This document shows, piece by piece, positions 1-7,467 of a stretch of DNA of 64,000 nucleotides. The notes beneath the pieces were generated by a model, which saw only the letters and a program-made list of their open reading frames with translations, searched no databases and was not told where the DNA came from. The stretch is from Ascidiella aspersa (Eukaryota). Positions within the stretch are counted from its first letter, which is position 1; the number at the start of each line of letters is the position of its first letter. Both the position numbers and the translations under genes were made by a program. The stretch lies in NCBI GenBank assembly GCA_963924565.1, contig OZ004608.1, positions 11,222,001-11,286,000 of the forward strand, in the 5' to 3' direction.

Positions 1-2
1 TA

Positions 3-1772
3 AGCACACTAACTGTAGGATGTCACAAAAATATCAATTTACCAAAACCTGTGCAAATAGTGTCAAATAAGGGTAATCTTCCAAATAGATGTTCATTTAA
101 TGCAAATTCTATCCCTCACAGTGATGCCAAAACCAACTTAACTCCTTTATGTACATCAACTAGTAGTTTTCTTGAGAATGCAACACCAACAAAAACCAAA
201 GCACAGCAAAGGCATTTCCAAAGCAAAACAAGTTTTACGCCATCTGGCACCGAGTACAATCCATGGAAAAAGCAAGAAAGTCTGAGTAAAAGAAGAAGAA
301 CTTTCAGTGGTTCCTGTGTTAATGCTCAGACTGGAAACCTCCTGAAGTTGAAGCCTACGCCTGTCGTACTTAAAAATACAACAGAAGTAATGCAGACAAA
401 TTTCACTCCAGGGGCAACAAAGCAAACAGAAACTGTGAGTTTCTTAGGAGGGAAATCATGCCAGGGCTTTAAGACTGCAAGTAACAAAGATGTTAAAATA
501 TCCTCCGAGGCTTGGAATAAAGCTAAAGACTTGATGAAATGTCTCGATAAACCGCCAATGGCTTTGTCTCAAAGAGTGCCTAATACAAGTCCTATTAAAG
601 TGTCTAAAGCTGCTTGGTTAAAGATTGAGTCACAAACACCTTGTAACATGAATGCCACTGCATCTAAAGGTAATTATGACACTGCATCTAAAGGTAATAA
701 TGCTACAACAGTAAAAAAATTAAAAATGGCTCTATGTCAAGGCTTTAAGACTGCTAATAATAAGGATTTGAAAATATCCAATAATGCATGGAATAAAGCC
801 ATACAATTTATGAACAATGTTGAAGGGCCCTCAATTGAACATCCTCAAAAGGTAGTTACGAGAAGTCCAATAACGATTTCAAAAGCCTCTTGGTCAAAGG
901 CAGAAAGCACATTGCAGAGCAAGGATCAAACGCTTACAAACATTAAGCATTGCAATATACAAACAAAGAAACAGCCAATCGTGCAAAACACTTCTTGTGG
1001 ATTTCCGGAAATTTCGAACAACTGTGGATTTAGCACTGCAAGTAAAAAAGCCATAACTGTTTCCAAACAAGCGTGGACCAAAGCAATGCAGTTCATGGAA
1101 AATGAATCATCTGCTCTGTCACCAAATTGTGGTAACCTTGAGGGTAACTTGAATCATATTAGTAGTGGTGGTTGCAAGCCAATCACTATACCCAAAGAAG
1201 CATGGAATAAGGCAAAACATGTTATGTCAAGTTCAAGTTGCATGGAGAATAAAATGGAGAAAACTGACAATATTACCGGTAAATCAGTTGCGAAAAACGT
1301 TGAAAAAATATGTAAACTAGAGAGAAAAGTGATTCAACCTGTTGGTACTCTAAAATCTGTAAAACCAAATAGTTTTACGACTCCAAAATCTTTGCAAAAT
1401 TTGCCTGAAAACAGTTCGGATTCTGGATGCGGAATTCGAACTCCTTCTTCCACAGTAAGAACAACAGATGACTCTAACCTGCTTAGCCAAAAAGCTGTTT
1501 TAAGGAGTTTCCCGTCTGCGAAAAGACGCAACAGTGCCTACAAGCCACCAAGGAGTAAAAGGGATAAACTTCAAAACCATAGCAAAAAAACGGGGCCTGA
1601 TATTGCACAAACAGTTGATTCTGAAAAGGAGAATGTTGTACCGTCTTCTCAAAAATCACCTGCTTGCAGGTCGATTGGTAAACGCCTGGGCATCAAAACG
1701 AACCCGGAAACTCAGATTATGATGTCTGACGAAAGTTTGCTTTTGGCGTTGGAGCTAATTGAAAACACATGA
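3..1772 (+). CDS. Terminal exon of a BRC-like-repeat protein (BRCA2-like RAD51-binding repeats), 5'-partial
   Basis: Frame is open from position 3 (STLTVGCHKNINLPKPVQ...) to TGA at 1770-1772, about 590 codons of S/T/K/N-rich disordered sequence. It contains GFKTASNKDVKISSEAWNKAKDLM (~459-540), GFKTANNKDLKISNNAWNKAIQFM (~735-815) and GFSTASKKAITVSKQAWTKAMQFM (~1023-1100), matching the BRC consensus FxTASGKxVxVSxxxLxKAKxLF, plus three half repeats and a SAYKPPRS motif. Candidate AATAAA at 2347-2352. Confidence 0.75.
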   Translation, partial: STLTVGCHKNINLPKPVQIVSNKGNLPNRCSFNANSIPHSDAKTNLTPLCTSTSSFLENATPTKTKAQQRHFQSKTSFTPSGTEYNPWKKQESLSKRRRTFSGSCVNAQTGNLLKLKPTPVVLKNTTEVMQTNFTPGATKQTETVSFLGGKSCQGFKTASNKDVKISSEAWNKAKDLMKCLDKPPMALSQRVPNTSPIKVSKAAWLKIESQTPCNMNATASKGNYDTASKGNNATTVKKLKMALCQGFKTANNKDLKISNNAWNKAIQFMNNVEGPSIEHPQKVVTRSPITISKASWSKAESTLQSKDQTLTNIKHCNIQTKKQPIVQNTSCGFPEISNNCGFSTASKKAITVSKQAWTKAMQFMENESSALSPNCGNLEGNLNHISSGGCKPITIPKEAWNKAKHVMSSSSCMENKMEKTDNITGKSVAKNVEKICKLERKVIQPVGTLKSVKPNSFTTPKSLQNLPENSSDSGCGIRTPSSTVRTTDDSNLLSQKAVLRSFPSAKRRNSAYKPPRSKRDKLQNHSKKTGPDIAQTVDSEKENVVPSSQKSPACRSIGKRLGIKTNPETQIMMSDESLLLALELIENT

Positions 1773-2610
1773 CGTCACATTGGCACAGTGATTTATTTTA
1801 TTCACTTAACCGCAGTGACACCCTGTTGTTGTTGTTGGGCGATTTTATAGTGTTTCTTACAGTACTATACGTATGAACGCGTGCTGATTACTCCTAGCGC
1901 TTTGTACTGATTTTGCAATTTAGCTTTTTCTTACCACTATTGTTCTATCCCACGCCACTTGCATGAATTGTTTTCGCGATTTTTCGTGTTTCACATTTTT
2001 TCAAATTTTATGCTGTTTGCCGTTGTTGCAATTTGCTTTTTGTTGCCACTTAAAGTTCTTCAGCTTCTCGAAGTTTTCTCTGTTACTGATACGGTAGAAG
2101 AGGACTGCGAAATGCTATTTGAAAGAGGCCGTAAAATGCGTACAAATACTCTACACTTCAGGAACAGGCGATCTCTTAAGTGAAAATTGTATTTTACAAC
2201 ACGAAAAACACAGTTTTACAAGACACAATCCACACTTAAATTACCTAACGGCTGAAAAGGCAAAAGTTATAACAGGGCAGAGGACACAACCGGAAAAATA
2301 GCGCAAAAACAAAACACTTTAAATTGCTAAAGTCGTATAAATAACAAATAAATACACAACAACAGCGGTGGCAAGAAATTATACCCTGTAATAGTTGAAT
2401 TTAAGAAAAATCCGCAAACTCAATGTTTGGCTTTTTAATTATATTTCAATTTATGAACATTTTTCCAACTTACGATTTCACTGTGTAACAGTAATCGGCC
2501 TACAGTATTTTTATTTTACCGTTAAATTATATAAAACAAAATATCCAACATGGGAATAGTCACAAGTGTAAAGCTCTTCCTGCGCGAGAAAAATCGCCAT
2601 TCTCGTTCGT

Positions 2611-5600
2611 CTATTCGGTGTACATCAATCCGGGGCTGTCTTCGTCAGACACCAGGTTCTGGTAAAGGCTCTGCTCCTTCTTTCGCTTTCTGTATCGCTT
2701 CATGCTGGTCACTGCCAGCGCCACGAGCACGTTAAGTACTACGAAGGCGATCACACCGACCGACGCCCACACAATTGACTCGGTGGTGGCGAGAGCGTCT
2801 GCGCTTGCTGTTGCTGGTGACTCTGTTTAAACGGAAGCGGTTATTTTGAAGCGCGACTTGCAATGCAACCACATCGCAGTAAAATGTAGAAATCACAACG
2901 ACTGGGTTATTTTAGCAGTTCCCATATAAACGGTTCTAAACTTTTCAGCGGGGACTCGTAAATTCCCTTTGGCAGACACGTTTCCATTTACAAAACGCGA
3001 TTAAAATAAACTACGCGAAACGTTAATTTACCTAATTATTACTCTACGCGATTAACAATATTATAGGACAAACGCTCATTAGTTTTTAAGAAAATGTCAA
3101 CTTTTCGCTGGGCTCGCTTAAATTTTGTTTGGTAAACACTATACCCACTTTTCCATTGACAAAACGTGGATAAAATGTATTATGTGGATCTTTCATTTAC
3201 CTACTTATAACCAGACCCGATCAAATTTATTTTAAGGACAAACGCTCATTATTTTTTTTTATAGAAAATGTTTATTTAGATAGAAGTAAAGAGGTAAGAT
3301 TTACCTGGAAACGTCACCTCGTAGCTGTACCCAAGTTGCTCGCTCGGTACAAACATTTCACCGTTTTTAACCGGCGGAAAGAATGGAACCATGTTGTAGT
3401 TGAGGTTGTGGCCGACCGGGGCGTCTTGCTCCGGGTAGTCCGACAACGTTCCATTGTTCCTGGTAAAAAAAGTTCAACAACATAAATTTTACTGCCTGGT
3501 TAAACTGATGTGCCCATAAACGACGTAGCGCAAAACATTAAATTCCGACGCAACACTACTTTCTTTTTGCTTTGTCTCAATTTTGAGATTACTGTTTTAA
3601 AAACGAGATAACAGTTTTAATAATTTTACTGTCTGATTGAAACGAAGCATTGCCTTAAATAACGCATTAAATGACAGTACATTATAAAAAACAGGAATTA
3701 CTTTTCCGTTGTAACATGTTTTCTAAGTGTGAATTAAGAGAGTAATTTAAAAGAGTTGATTGTTTTATATGCGTCATTTAATATGACCCTCGAATATAAA
3801 CGTCCTAAACCCCCCCATCGTAAGTGCTGTGCCTTAAAGCAAGTCATTCTCAGAATCCTACCTCTTTAGCCACTCGTCGAAGATAGCATCAGTGAAGGAA
3901 TGGAGCAGAACGAATATTGGGTCGTTGGTTGAGGCGTGGGTCGTTCCTCCGGTGCCGTTTAGGAAAAGATGGGCCAAGTTGTGCAGAGTTCGAACACCGA
4001 CTTCAAATTCACCGTCCGGTTTTGAATAACCTAAAGACAGGGGAAAATAAACTGGCTATAAAACAGTGTTTCGCAACCTTTTTTGGCTTGCGACACCCTA
4101 CAGAAATTAAAATATTGTATCAAGAAGCTTACCAATAGAGCAAAAATTAGAATCCTAACTAATTTGAAATGTGTTTCGGCACCCTTGAGCGTTAAAAATG
4201 GCACCCTATAGAGTGCCGCGGCACCCCGTTTGAGAACCACTGCGCTCTAGGGTGGACAATTGAGCATCAGGTATTTTATGTTTTTGAAGGCAATTTATGT
4301 TGTGAAAGTAAATCAGCCAAGAAAACGTAGGGTTGCATAAGCCTTGAAAGAGGCAAGTTTAAGTTATAGATATTTTGGTCGCTAACATACTTCGGATAAA
4401 ATTAAGTTTGCACAATGCATTTAAGCTAAGCTAAAATTTTAGTTTCTTTTGCAATACTCGGGTAAACTCGTACCTTCCAACGCGTTCCTAAAACTTCCAT
4501 TCGAGTTGGAAAAAAAGGGAAACGAGTCGTAGGTTTCCACTTGCACGCAGCTTGCCACGTCATCTGGCTCGGGAAGGTTCTGCACTGCTGGGCGTTCAAC
4601 GTTGCCACCGGGATTGCGAACAATTGGGCCTGGAATGCCCACAATGATAACATTATTAATTAAAAAGGAAGGAGTAATAATAAGCAACAAATTAAACATA
4701 ACTGTACAGCTTTCGGTGTACTAACTGTACAGGCTTACATAAATGTCGAGGACCTATATGCCAACGAACGGCGTTCATTGACGTACAATGTCAATCACCA
4801 AACATTCAATAGATACAGAAATGTTATTGATAAAGAAACATTCTGATCGTGAATTCCTTGCGTAACTTACAGGTAATTTTATTTTCGCTCTATATTTTTA
4901 ACCAGGAAAATTGTTATTTTGCTAGAAAGGGATGTAAAATGTTAAATCCGAGTATATTACCCTCTGCCGTTCCGTTGCACAACTTCAGGTTCTCGTTGTA
5001 CCAATCCATGCTGAGGCAAACCACTTCCCAATCGGCAAAACGCGAGTTGTTTCCTAACGACGTCGCATTGTCGGCACTTCGAGCGCCCATCAACTCGTCC
5101 GTGCAAATGTCACACTCTGAACCTGTCAATTAATTAGCGGGGAAATTAATGGGACTTATTTAATTAAGGTAAAAATTAGAGTGTCAATGGCATTACTTTT
5201 TAATCTATGGAAAATACCAGCTTGGATTTTAAACTGGGTTGTCACTTAATCGACATTAAGTTGCCAAAGAGTATTTGAAGTCGAAAAATATACAAGTGGT
5301 GCTTTAATTAATTTTACGCCGTATATAATAGGAACTACTAACATATCACCCATATCGATTGCTTAGTACTTCAGACTATTTTTAAAGCGTTTAATAAAAA
5401 AACAAATTTGCCATTTTTTTAACATTTTATTTTCTGCTGAAGATTCCTTACAAACCTAAGTGGTCCAACTTATAACAAAAATATACATGACAATTAACGC
5501 AGCCCTGCTACTTAATCACAAACGCATAGACCTCCTACCTCCGATGGCAAAGTCCCAGTATGGCAGTGACAGGGTCGGGTCCCCTGCTAGCACCTGCAAG

Positions 5601-7467
5601 TCGCGCTCGAGCCCAAGAAGATGCATTCTGTGCCAGGTGAGGAAGGCAGGGCCCTCGTGGGAGAAGTCGATGGCCGCGTAGGTCTGGCCTGGGATAAGCA
5701 CAGTGTCGCGCACTGAGTAGTAGTGCTGCCAGGTAAAAAGGTCGTACACCGAGATGTTCACGAACTGGGGCTCAGTTCCGTTCTCGCCCAACAGGTTGCT
5801 GGGAAAATATTGCAATAACGAATAAAAAGGTATTTGTGCGGTGGATTTGATTGACCCTTTGCGTTGGAAACATTTCTATTAGTTGGGCCGTGGAAAAAAA
5901 TCTGTTGAAACGTATATTTAGTGTCGAGAACTATGTGATTGCTTGCGCTGCTAGTCTGTGACAACTTTCAATTTTATTTTATCTATGACACAATAAAAGG
6001 TTTACTAAGACATGAAAAATAAGGATCATAACAAAAGCAGGAAATAAGGTTTGTTCAGACCTGGATTATTATACTTAAACGAAAGCATTGTTTAATTACC
6101 GCTAGGAGATCTCACGTTTCATTGCTAAATTTGAAAGTTTAGAGTTTGGACAATAAAGCATTTCGCCTTTAACGTCTATTTGGGCCGTTATTTTCACCAT
6201 TAAACTTATTGATAGTTTAGATTTCCTTAAAAAAATCATTTTAAATCTAATAACGGAAGATAATATTATATCGATATGATCTTTACAGTATAAGATGATA
6301 TCACGGACTAAGAATTCCAAAGGAATGCAGAAAGTCAGAAAAGATCTATTTATCTGACAAATTTGTAAAAAGTAAAAGTATAGATAGGTCTTGGTTCAAT
6401 TAAACTATTTTCAGGGCTATTGGTTAACAACATAGTAAATGATTCAAGACGCCCTTCCGTGTTTCATACCTGTAAAATTCGGTGGCGACCACAAAGTCCG
6501 GATGCGGCGCGGTCTTGGACTCGTCGAGGACGCTCAGAAACCTTTCTTGCTCCTCCGTTGTCATGTTTACGATGTTCCTCCGGACGTTGACCGCCCGTCG
6601 CTCCTGGCAACCGTCTCCTTGCCAGCCAATCTGGCACCGGGAGCAGTCAAATCCGCCGAAGTTTCCGTTGCACTCGCATGCCCTTTAAAGTAGATAGAAA
6701 GTATACCCTACTAAGACAGGGGTGGGCAAATATTCTTTAGATGCCGTAGCACGAGAAACAGAAAATGGTTTGAAAGGCCGGGTCAAAGAGAGAAATCCAA
6801 ACGGGAGGTAGCAATGAAGTCTTACTGACTTTTGTAAAACCCATCCCACGAAAGCGCGGTGGATGCCCTCAAAAAAGCTTTTATTAAAAATGAGAAGCAT
6901 ACCCAAAGGCTTGGCTAGAGTAGCACTCAAGTAAAATGATATAGGTCTAATCCATAAAGGCATTTTTTTATTACGAATAATAAATTGTTTCGTGCAGGCA
7001 TTAAGTAAATTTAAATTATGCTCTAAAGTCTATAAAGTATATGTACCTTGGGGATTTTCGGTATGTTTAGTATAAATTAGGGAAAAGCTTTTGCTAGTTG
7101 TGCATATGTGCATATACAAAGTAAAAAAGCACATTTCAAAACCATTGTCCATTTAACTGTCTCTAGCTTCTTACCTAGTGAAGAACCTTTCCGGCCACCT
7201 TTCTCTGTCGTCGATCCCGGCCAACAGATATTGCACTCCGTGACGTAGGTCTTCGATTGTGACGTCAGCGCAGCGGCCTCTTCCCTCCAGCTCGCCGCAC
7301 TGGGAGCCGTTCAGCAAGGGGCAGCACTCTTTCGAAACTATTGCGTCCACAGTGGCGCAAACCCTTGGAAACTGGCAACTTGCAAGGTGCAGTGCGGACA
7401 CGAAAAACAGCAGTATAACCGTGGGAAGGCTTGGCTGCATATTAGCTGAATGAAGTGCAGTCTTCAT
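2611..7467 (-). CDS. TYRP1: Tyrosinase-related protein (TYRP1/DCT family, Tyrp1/2-type), 8 exons
   Basis: Exons on minus: 7467(or 7440)-7175, 6682-6470, 5798-5539, 5122-4961, 4629-4474, 4030-3862, 3459-3305, 2822-2611, all GT-AG with matching phases. Signal peptide then QFPRVC and a Cys-rich domain ([15 protein letters not shown]). Metal site A WQHYYSV...[14 protein letters not shown]. Metal site [14 protein letters not shown]...[20 protein letters not shown] (LLH as in TYRPs, not tyrosinase LHH). Then DAPVGHN, a TM helix and a basic cytoplasmic tail. Confidence 0.95.
2968..3271. repeat. Diverged tandem duplication (~130-145 bp x2) in TYRP intron 7
   Basis: 2968-3097 and 3128-3271 share tttgg...tttccatt(t/g)acaaaacg...atttaccta...aggacaaacgctcatta...agaaaatgt. 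Confidence 0.7.
4064..4242. mobile_element. hAT-type MITE (CAGTG(G/T)TTCTCAA termini) in TYRP intron 5
   Basis: Starts cagtgtttcgcaacc and ends gtttgagaaccactg. Internal gcacc/gtgcc motifs are shared with the 48143 copy. No clear TSD. Confidence 0.65.

What the first reader, a model, noticed from the sequence alone, without database searches (positions are those of the whole stretch)
459..1772. BRC-like repeat array at the extreme C-terminus of a protein, with no room for a BRCA2 DNA-binding domain
Seen: three full repeats (FKTASNKDVKISSEAWNKAKDLM, FKTANNKDLKISNNAWNKAIQFM, FSTASKKAITVSKQAWTKAMQFM) lie in one exon of at least 1.77 kb that ends in a stop at 1772. The convergent TYRP stop codon is only ~840 bp away. 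Known: in canonical BRCA2 the BRC repeats (FxxA hairpin plus LFDE helix, binding RAD51) lie upstream of the helical/OB-fold DNA-binding domain. Inference: this is either a BRCA2 with rearranged or missing DBD, or a different protein that acquired a multivalent RAD51-binding tail. Either would be an unusual recombination-mediator architecture.
Basis: partly seen in the sequence, partly recalled or inferred. Interest (0 to 1): 0.8.

Follow-up and report, generated by a model that had tools for sequence, protein, structure and literature searches.

The report
Sea-squirt mini-BRCA2 without DNA-binding domain
This is an expressed two-exon gene of a sea squirt that encodes a short (768 aa), mostly disordered BRCA2-type protein with RAD51-binding BRC repeats and a TR2-like tail but no DNA-binding domain, an architecture so far described only in fruit flies and mosses.

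Summary
Window 468-1226 encodes three full BRC repeats (Pfam PF00634, E=2e-14) alternating with three half repeats, in one exon that ends at the stop at 1770-1772.

RNA data show a two-exon mRNA. A 240-nt GT..AG intron lies left of the window. The transcript runs colinear through the stop into a 3'UTR, with no splice to downstream exons.

The protein is 768 aa. The repeats occupy about aa 335-595, so they are not at the extreme C-terminus. A 173-aa tail follows, carrying a conserved S-A-Y-K-P-P-R motif (human TR2 is KAFQPPR) and a conserved acidic terminal helix.

Six-frame HMM searches of the whole 308-Mb genome find no other BRC locus and no BRCA2 helical, OB1 or Tower domain. The only trace is one sub-threshold OB3-like ORF, which failed every follow-up and is probably antisense to a GPCR exon.

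The AlphaFold2 model has no globular domain.

Ciona intestinalis LOC100185089 and one unnamed transcript share the same short layout and the same C-terminal end.

Best reading: a noncanonical, DBD-less BRCA2 of tunicates. This is a new member of a kind known from Drosophila and mosses.

DBD absence is probable, not proven.

The scan had already noted the repeat grammar and the PP motif on this same stretch.

The parts
1..1772 (+). In-window part of coding exon 2 of the BRC-repeat gene. The exon starts 447 nt left of the window, at L001 1054. Coding exon 1 (29 codons plus 1 nt) is L001 726-813, also outside the window. The stop is at 1770-1772.
   Evidence: Open frame. A GT..AG intron at L001 814-1053 is joined in RNA contig X1 record 4. 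X1 record 5 runs colinear over the stop.
252..275 (+). Conserved E-Y-N-P-W-K-K-Q motif (E(F/Y)NPW in the homologues). Partner unknown.
   Evidence: Present in the window protein, in P0001 (EFNPWKKQ) and in Ciona P0003 (EFNPWVKN).
468..536 (+). BRC repeat 1 (FKTASNKDVKISSEAWNKAKDLM).
   Evidence: PF00634 best stretch. The AF2 model shows a hairpin plus helix at pLDDT 56-78.
588..632 (+). Half repeat 1 (SPIKVSKAAWLKIES). It has the helix module only, with no FxxA.
744..812 (+). BRC repeat 2 (FKTANNKDLKISNNAWNKAIQFM).
   Evidence: It aligns to a human BRCA2 BRC peptide, PDB 8c3n_B.
864..908 (+). Half repeat 2 (SPITISKASWSKAES).
1029..1097 (+). BRC repeat 3 (FSTASKKAITVSKQAWTKAMQFM).
1176..1226 (+). 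Half repeat 3 (KPITIPKEAWNKAKHVM). It aligns with the last full BRC repeat of P0001 and of Ciona P0003 but has lost the FxTA part.
   Evidence: The AF2 model shows a helix at residues 547-565.
1518..1568 (+). Basic P-motif region AKRRNSAYKPPRSKRDK. It resembles the BRCA2 TR2/PhePP motif, with Tyr in place of the Phe.
   Evidence: N, S, Y, P, P, R and K are invariant in the three homologues. Human TR2 is 3296-KAFQPPR-3302 and the general motif is KxFxPP (PMC10622577).
1713..1769 (+). Conserved acidic amphipathic terminal helix QIMMSDESLLLALELIENT, the last residues of the protein.
   Evidence: Invariant Q, I, S, D, E, L, L, A, L and E in all three homologues, each of which ends just after it. 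AF2 pLDDT is 77-89.
1773..2360 (+). 3' UTR. RNA depth fades between about 2150 and 2360.
   Evidence: X1 RNA contigs reach L001 3649 and 3860. X4 stranded reads fade after L001 3360.

Best explanation
The gene encodes the noncanonical, DNA-binding-domain-less BRCA2 of a tunicate. It is a 768-aa, strongly basic, almost wholly disordered recombination mediator.

Shown:
- It is transcribed from the + strand, spliced once, and ends at the stop at 1772.
- It carries three Pfam-significant BRC repeats.
- It is the only BRC-bearing locus detected in the genome.
- Two distant homologues, one of them from Ciona, keep the same short layout and the same C-terminal end.

Inferred:
- The three full repeats bind monomeric RAD51, and probably the DMC1-like paralogue, through the FxTA hairpin and the following helix with its hydrophobic pair (LM/FM).
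- The conserved basic xAYKPPR motif binds across protomers of the assembled filament and stabilises it, as TR2 and PhePP do.
- DNA contact, if needed, comes from the basic disordered regions (net charge +50), as shown for moss BRCA2.
- The half repeats, which have only the helix module, and the acidic terminal helix are extra contact sites with unknown partners.
For: - BRC repeats: PF00634, E=2e-14, 3 stretches. Repeat 2 aligns to a human BRC peptide in the PDB.
- Gene model: the intron at L001 814-1053 is joined in an RNA contig. A 1,628-nt RNA contig runs colinear across the stop. Stranded RNA reads all lie in one direction at depth 3-11. No joint or loose end lies inside exon 2.
- Genome-wide six-frame HMM searches: PF00634 matches only here. 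OB1 and the helical domain have no match at E<=1. Tower matches only at E=2.4. The gene is single copy.
- The same method does find RAD51, a DMC1-like gene and two paralogues, and a 28-bit GH6 exon.
- AF2: 632 of 738 residues have pLDDT below 50. Only the BRC units and the terminal helix are confident, and there is no OB fold.
- Homologues P0001 (874 aa) and Ciona LOC100185089 (604 aa) carry only PF00634. They share the NS(A/S)Y(K/R)PPR motif and the terminal SDE(S/N)LL.A..L.E motif, and end right after it.
- TR2 and PhePP motif definitions come from PMC10622577 and PMC11436757. The DBD-less BRCA2 class is described in PMC12412785.
Against: - DBD absence rests on exon-by-exon six-frame HMM searches with no eukaryotic positive control. 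Short or divergent exons could be missed.
- One sub-threshold OB3-like ORF exists on contig C5 (21-23 bits against a cut-off of 24).
- The P-motif has Tyr where the literature calls Phe invariant. The similarity covers 7 residues and gave no hit in PDB profile searches.
- No binding data exist, and no complex model could be run.
- The AF2 alignment had only 3 sequences.
- Polymorphism shows only weak constraint: 8 synonymous against 14 non-synonymous SNPs.
Confidence: 0.7

Rival explanations
1. The BRCA2 functions are split or were missed. A canonical helical/OB DNA-binding domain is still encoded elsewhere in the genome, for example around C5:22053208, either as a separate gene that works with this BRC protein or as a second, highly divergent BRCA2.
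For: PF09104 (OB3) matches profile positions 73-136 at 21.3-23.4 bits, just below the cut-off of 24, with single-protein E=5e-5. The six-frame searches had no eukaryotic positive control.
Against: - phmmer of that 96-aa ORF against 1.84 billion proteins found only five low-complexity, multi-stretch hits, none of them BRCA2.
- It has no PDB hit at E<=10, although BRCA2 DBD structures exist.
- There is no OB1, helical or Tower signal anywhere in the genome.
- None of the nine neighbouring + strand ORFs is BRCA2-like.
- The ORF lies just downstream of a 7tm_2 TM6-7 exon on the opposite strand and overlaps minus-strand ORFs. It is probably the antisense of that receptor's tail exon.
Confidence: 0.12
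2. This is not a BRCA2 orthologue. The true BRCA2 was lost in tunicates, and an unrelated disordered protein acquired BRC repeats and a PP motif by convergence or exon capture.
For: Outside the BRC repeats there is no statistically significant similarity to any BRCA2. All non-tunicate-type hits come through the repeats. The tail gave nothing. Ciona's protein is annotated only as uncharacterized.
Against: BRC repeats are known almost only from BRCA2 orthologues. The order is the BRCA2 order: basic/NLS-like region, then BRC array, then a KxFxPP-like motif near the C-terminus (PMC10622577). It is the only BRC locus in the genome. Fly and moss BRCA2 show that loss of the DBD from a true orthologue happens.
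Confidence: 0.12
3. This is a decaying or non-functional remnant of BRCA2: a truncated gene that is transcribed but no longer acts in recombination.
For: Non-synonymous polymorphism is high, with 14 of the 22 listed SNPs. The third half repeat has lost its FxTA part.
Against: The 768-codon frame is intact, the mRNA is spliced and polyadenylation-competent, and the one indel polymorphism is in frame. Motifs are conserved at about 28% overall identity across three species, including the exact C-terminal end.
Confidence: 0.04

Closest known systems
Drosophila BRCA2 homologue (for example the D. guanche protein P0022, 831 aa; D. melanogaster Brca2 as described in PMC12412785)
   Same: It is a short protein with BRC repeats as its only Pfam domain. 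It has no canonical DBD, a basic disordered remainder, and is the only BRCA2-type gene of its genome.
   Different: The fly protein has more and more regular repeats (6 Pfam stretches, 148 bits). It has no alternating half repeats, and the helix position has Leu or Met rather than Trp. The tunicate-type terminal SDESLL..LE helix and the NSAYKPPR motif are not seen in P0022. The lineage is unrelated, so the DBD loss is independent.
Moss noncanonical BRCA2 (Physcomitrium patens PpBRCA2, 391 aa; PMC12412785)
   Same: It has an NLS plus BRC repeats, no DBD, few or no introns, and disordered regions proposed to bind DNA.
   Different: In moss the repeats are packed at the C-terminal end. Here a 173-aa tail with a TR2-like motif follows them. 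DNA binding was shown for moss and is only inferred here.
Canonical vertebrate BRCA2 (BRC repeats, helical/OB/Tower DBD, exon 27 TR2)
   Same: It shares BRC repeats with the FxxA hairpin and a hydrophobic pair, and a C-terminal basic KxFxPP-type motif (human 3296-KAFQPPR-3302 against S-A-Y-K-P-P-R here).
   Different: The protein is about 4.4 times shorter than the 3,418-aa human BRCA2 (length from PMC3240595's abstract). It has no helical domain, OB folds or Tower, and so no DSS1 site. No PALB2 WD40 partner was detected in the genome. It has Tyr instead of Phe in the P-motif and Trp in the repeat helix.

Membership tests
BRCA2 (canonical) | One or more BRC repeats (Pfam PF00634) with the FxxA module and a following hydrophobic pair | tested here: met
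   53.1 bits, E=2e-14, 3 stretches. The FxTA module is followed by LM, FM and FM in the three repeats.
BRCA2 (canonical) | Helical domain, OB1-OB3 and Tower DNA/DSS1-binding domain in the same protein | tested here: not met
   Pfam finds nothing on the protein. The full gene model leaves no room for it. AF2 shows no folded domain. Genome-wide searches with PF09169 and PF09103 find nothing, and PF09121 matches only at E=2.4.
BRCA2 (canonical) | C-terminal filament-binding P-motif (FxPP/KxFxPP, TR2) with an invariant Phe | tested here: inconclusive
   The motif is S-A-Y-K-P-P-R flanked by basic residues and is conserved in 3 homologues. It has Tyr, not Phe. No significant database match was found. 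Binding was not tested.
BRCA2 (canonical) | N-terminal PALB2-binding helix | not tested
   Exon 1 gives only a chance Pfam hit. No PALB2 WD40 was found in the genome. No BRCA2 N-terminal sequence was on hand for comparison.
Noncanonical (DBD-less) BRCA2, as defined in PMC12412785 | BRC repeats present, canonical DBD absent from the protein and from the genome | tested here: met
   Caveat: one unverified sub-threshold OB3-like ORF on C5.
Noncanonical (DBD-less) BRCA2, as defined in PMC12412785 | Only BRC-bearing gene of the genome, so it stands in for BRCA2 | tested here: met
   PF00634 matches only at this locus. A protein self-search finds a single copy.
Noncanonical (DBD-less) BRCA2, as defined in PMC12412785 | Binds RAD51 and promotes RAD51 focus formation and homologous recombination | not testable with these tools
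   RAD51 and a DMC1-like gene are present in the genome. No complex prediction or experiment was possible.
Noncanonical (DBD-less) BRCA2, as defined in PMC12412785 | DNA binding through disordered regions | not testable with these tools
   Only composition is available: net charge +50, pI 9.7, basic clusters.

The most novel reading that the evidence does not exclude
Tunicates as a clade, the sister group of vertebrates, run homologous recombination with a mini-BRCA2 that has lost the whole DSS1/DNA-binding domain and apparently also its PALB2 partner. This would be a third, independent origin of noncanonical BRCA2, and the first within chordates.

In this lineage the protein has also evolved a new repeat grammar. 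Full BRC repeats alternate with SP-prefixed half repeats that have only the helix module. All six carry Trp at the helix contact position. A Tyr-type P-motif and a conserved acidic terminal helix complete the layout. Together these may define a different way of switching between RAD51 monomer delivery and filament stabilisation.
Probability: 0.35. Interest if true: 0.65.

Novelty: new member of a known kind. Interest (0 to 1): 0.5.

Why it matters
A 2025 paper (PMC12412785) states that most BRCA2 orthologues have the canonical DBD, with Drosophila as the exception, and adds mosses as a second case.

Ciona is an experimentally tractable model with CRISPR and accessible gametes. The question of what the DBD, DSS1 and PALB2 are needed for could be tested there in a close relative of vertebrates.

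The tail also offers a natural variant (Tyr for Phe) of the filament-stabilising P-motif. The conserved terminal helix has no known partner.

Tried and rejected
- Downstream DBD exons: rejected by RNA contigs and stranded reads and by the convergent tyrosinase-family gene 838 nt away.
- Upstream DBD exons: rejected. Only one 29-codon exon precedes, and a C2H2 zinc-finger gene lies on the other strand further up.
- The OB3-like ORF on C5 was followed with Pfam, phmmer against 1.84 billion proteins, PDB, neighbouring ORFs and opposite-strand ORFs. It found no support and is treated as probably spurious, though not formally excluded.
- Tail homology searches gave nothing: PDB phmmer, PDB profile, and a word search on residues 560-738.
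- A profile search with the three homologues found no further members of the short family, only BRCA2 fragments matched through their repeats.
- Tandem Repeats Finder sees no DNA-level super-repeat, only a 24-nt duplication at 651-702. The duplications are therefore old.
- The paper on Fanconi genes in Ciona (Stanley et al. 2016) is not held. Literature searches found nothing on tunicate BRCA2 domain structure.
The protein atlas could not read new sequence.
- The joined two-exon protein was not sent to any search.

Full report
**Observation**

Frame 3 of the window is open from base 3 to a TGA at 1770-1772. The Pfam BRCA2-repeat model PF00634 scores 53.1 bits (cut-off 20.3), E=2e-14, in three stretches. 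Repeat 2 also aligns to a human BRCA2 BRC peptide in PDB entry 8c3n.

Three half repeats lie between and after the full repeats: SPIKVSKAAWLKIES, SPITISKASWSKAES and KPITIPKEAWNKAKHVM. They keep the helix part but lack FxTA. Full plus half repeat form a roughly 92-aa super-unit; units 1 and 2 are 47% identical and unit 3 is 30% identical to unit 1. The duplication is old, because Tandem Repeats Finder sees nothing at DNA level except a 24-nt duplication at 651-702. All six units carry Trp where the homologues have Leu, Phe or Met.

The window is G000:C2:11222001-11286000. The frame continues 447 nt to the left. The open frame is L001 1056-3272, 738 codons.

Public runs of the same organism were laid on L001:1-4800.
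- X2 and X3 have even depth over the intron and behave as DNA.
- X1 has no depth in the intron. It holds a 1,091-nt contig that joins L001 622-813 to 1054-1952 across a 240-nt GT..AG intron, so I read it as RNA. That is an inference, because its kind is not on record.
- A second X1 contig (1,628 nt) runs colinear from L001 2022 to 3649. It goes straight through the stop at 3270-3272 and 377 nt into the 3'UTR.
- X4 is a stranded RNA-seq run. It covers exon 2 at depth 3-11 with every first mate on the minus strand, which in the usual library type means RNA from the + strand. Depth fades after L001 3360.

No joint and no loose end lies inside exon 2. Only about 6% of X4 was read, so a rare isoform is not excluded.

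The phases fit. Exon 1 (L001 726-813) gives M-A-C-D...I-V-K plus one base, and exon 2 completes an Ala codon. The CDS is 2,307 nt, which is 768 aa. I did not send the joined protein to any search; exons were searched apart.

Upstream, on the other strand, lies a C2H2 zinc-finger gene. Downstream, a convergent tyrosinase-family gene (PF00264) ends at 2611-2613, 838 nt from our stop. There is therefore no room for DBD exons on either side.

**The protein**

The BRC array spans about residues 335-595 of 768, so it is not at the extreme C-terminus.

The protein is very basic (net +50, pI 9.7), with an acidic last 23 residues.

AlphaFold2 was run on exon 2 with a 3-sequence alignment. Mean pLDDT is 37.6, and 632 of 738 residues are below 50. 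The only confident elements are the three BRC hairpin-plus-helix units, the helix of half repeat 3, and a terminal helix at 725-737 with pLDDT 77-89. No OB fold or other globular domain appears.

**Relatives**

A word-based search found three proteins. Two share the whole layout: P0001 (874 aa, from a public assembly, organism not given) and "uncharacterized protein LOC100185089" of Ciona intestinalis (604 aa). Both have PF00634 as their only Pfam family.

At about 28% overall identity, the three share the following features:
- a basic cluster after PTSPIL;
- an E(F/Y)NPW motif;
- the BRC repeats;
- an invariant N-S-x-Y-x-P-P-R-x-K motif;
- a terminal Q-I-x-x-S-D-E-x-L-L-x-A-x-x-L-x-E helix, after which all three proteins stop.

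The shared end is independent support that the stop at 1772 is the true C-terminus.

A profile of the three found no further members. It found only BRCA2 fragments matched through their repeats, among them Drosophila BRCA2 homologues of 831-1,034 aa that also carry only PF00634.

**Is there a canonical BRCA2 or a DBD elsewhere in the genome?**

Six-frame HMM searches of all 308.6 Mb gave the following.

| Family | Result |
|---|---|
| PF00634 (BRC repeat) | this locus only |
| PF09103 (OB1) | no match at E<=1 |
| PF09169 (helical) | no match at E<=1 |
| PF09121 (Tower) | one chance-level hit, E=2.4 |
| PF09104 (OB3) | one sub-threshold hit at C5:22053208-22053399, 21.3 bits, E=0.036 |

As a 96-aa open frame the OB3-like hit scores 23.4 bits, against a cut-off of 24. 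I followed it up.
- phmmer against 1.84 billion representatives gave five multi-stretch low-complexity hits, none of them BRCA2.
- phmmer against the PDB gave nothing at E<=10.
- None of the nine neighbouring + strand frames is BRCA2-like.
- The frame overlaps minus-strand ORFs just downstream of a secretin/adhesion-type receptor TM6-7 exon.

I read it as the probable antisense of that receptor's tail exon, but it is not formally excluded.

The method does find intron-split genes here. It found RAD51 (387 bits, one open frame on C6), a four-exon DMC1-like gene on C8 and two paralogues, and a 28-bit GH6 exon. No PALB2 WD40 domain was found. The BRC gene is single copy. The searches had no eukaryotic positive control, so DBD absence is probable, not proven.

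**Organism**

The evidence points to a tunicate. The best named relative is from Ciona. A GH6 domain in an animal genome fits the tunicate cellulose synthase; this rests on established knowledge and on the title of PMC6523144, seen. An earlier scan note calls this genome a cellulose-making sea squirt.

**Mechanism**

Shown: the gene is expressed, spliced and intact, and its motifs are conserved.

Inferred from the families:
- The FxTA hairpins occupy the RAD51 oligomerisation pocket, and the following helix with its LM/FM pair gives the second contact, as in BRC4.
- The tail motif S-A-Y-K-P-P-R matches human TR2 (3296-KAFQPPR-3302) at A, P, P and R, with Tyr for Phe. It sits among basic residues, as does the KxFxPP consensus that also covers PhePP (2404-KVFVPPFK-2411). 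Those motifs bind across protomers and stabilise RAD51 and DMC1 filaments (PMC10622577; PMC11436757; PMC11229353).
- That literature calls the Phe invariant, so the Tyr form is a variant whose binding must be tested.
- DNA contact may come from the basic disordered regions, as shown for moss BRCA2 (PMC12412785).
- The partners of the half repeats, the NPW motif and the terminal helix are unknown.

**Comparison and novelty**

PMC12412785 (2025) defines two classes, canonical BRCA2 and noncanonical BRCA2 without a DBD. It lists only Drosophila and mosses in the second class. I found no paper on tunicate BRCA2 architecture, and the one likely source (Stanley et al. 2016) is not held.

This gene meets the tested criteria of the noncanonical class and fails the DBD criterion of the canonical one. 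It is a new member of a known kind, with lineage-specific features: half repeats, Trp, a Tyr-type P-motif and a terminal helix.

**Constraint**

Of the 22 SNPs listed inside exon 2, 8 are synonymous and 14 are not. Random change would give 21% synonymous. The one indel polymorphism is a 3-nt in-frame deletion. This suggests weak purifying selection, as expected for a fast-evolving disordered protein, but it is not statistically strong.

**Limits**

Only one reads call was allowed, so the C5 ORF could not be tested with RNA.

Noticed in passing
L001 160-650 (G000:C2:11220660-11221150, 850-1340 nt left of the window): A very high-copy repeat lies just upstream of and overlapping the 5'UTR of the BRC gene. 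DNA word depth reaches about 94,000 against about 100 in the flanks. Many loose read ends fall at 651/652. The RNA contig of the gene starts at 622, inside the repeat's end.
   Followed up: no
G000:C5:22053208-22053399 (+), L005 1474-1761: A 96-aa open frame matches the C-terminal half of the Pfam BRCA-2_OB3 model just below threshold (23.4 bits against 24). It has no other BRCA2-like signal around it and no BRCA2 hit by phmmer. It lies downstream of a 7tm_2 receptor exon on the other strand.
   Followed up: partly
G000:C6:9074080-9074814 (+) and G000:C8:22213323-22215460 (-): The best Rad51-family match (387 bits, whole domain) sits in a single 349-aa open frame, so RAD51 may be intronless here. 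A second recombinase, DMC1-like, is split into at least four exons. Two weaker paralogues lie on C9 and C7.
   Followed up: no
whole genome G000: No PALB2 WD40 domain (PF16756) was found at E<=1 in six-frame search, so the usual BRCA2 partner may be absent or too divergent.
   Followed up: no
window 651-702: A 24-nt tandem duplication (2.2 copies, 89% match) encodes ASKGNYDT/ASKGNNAT in the linker between half repeat 1 and BRC repeat 2.
   Followed up: no
window 1444 (L001 2944) and SNPs across L001 1054-3272: There is an in-frame 3-nt deletion allele in DNA run X3, and SNP density between individuals is high: 22 listed in the exon, 8 synonymous and 14 non-synonymous.
   Followed up: partly
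window 2611-7467 (-): A convergent tyrosinase-family gene. It has a signal-peptide exon at 7171-7467, a copper-site exon at 5516-5815 (PF00264) and a last exon at 2611-2772 with a transmembrane segment and a cytoplasmic tail.
   Followed up: partly
L003 300-6000 (-), 4-10 kb left of the window: A multi-exon C2H2 zinc-finger gene with Gln-rich stretches lies divergent to the BRC gene.
   Followed up: no
window 252-275: The E(F/Y)NPW(K/V)K motif is conserved in all three short BRCA2-type proteins, upstream of the repeats. No known partner or family matched.
   Followed up: no
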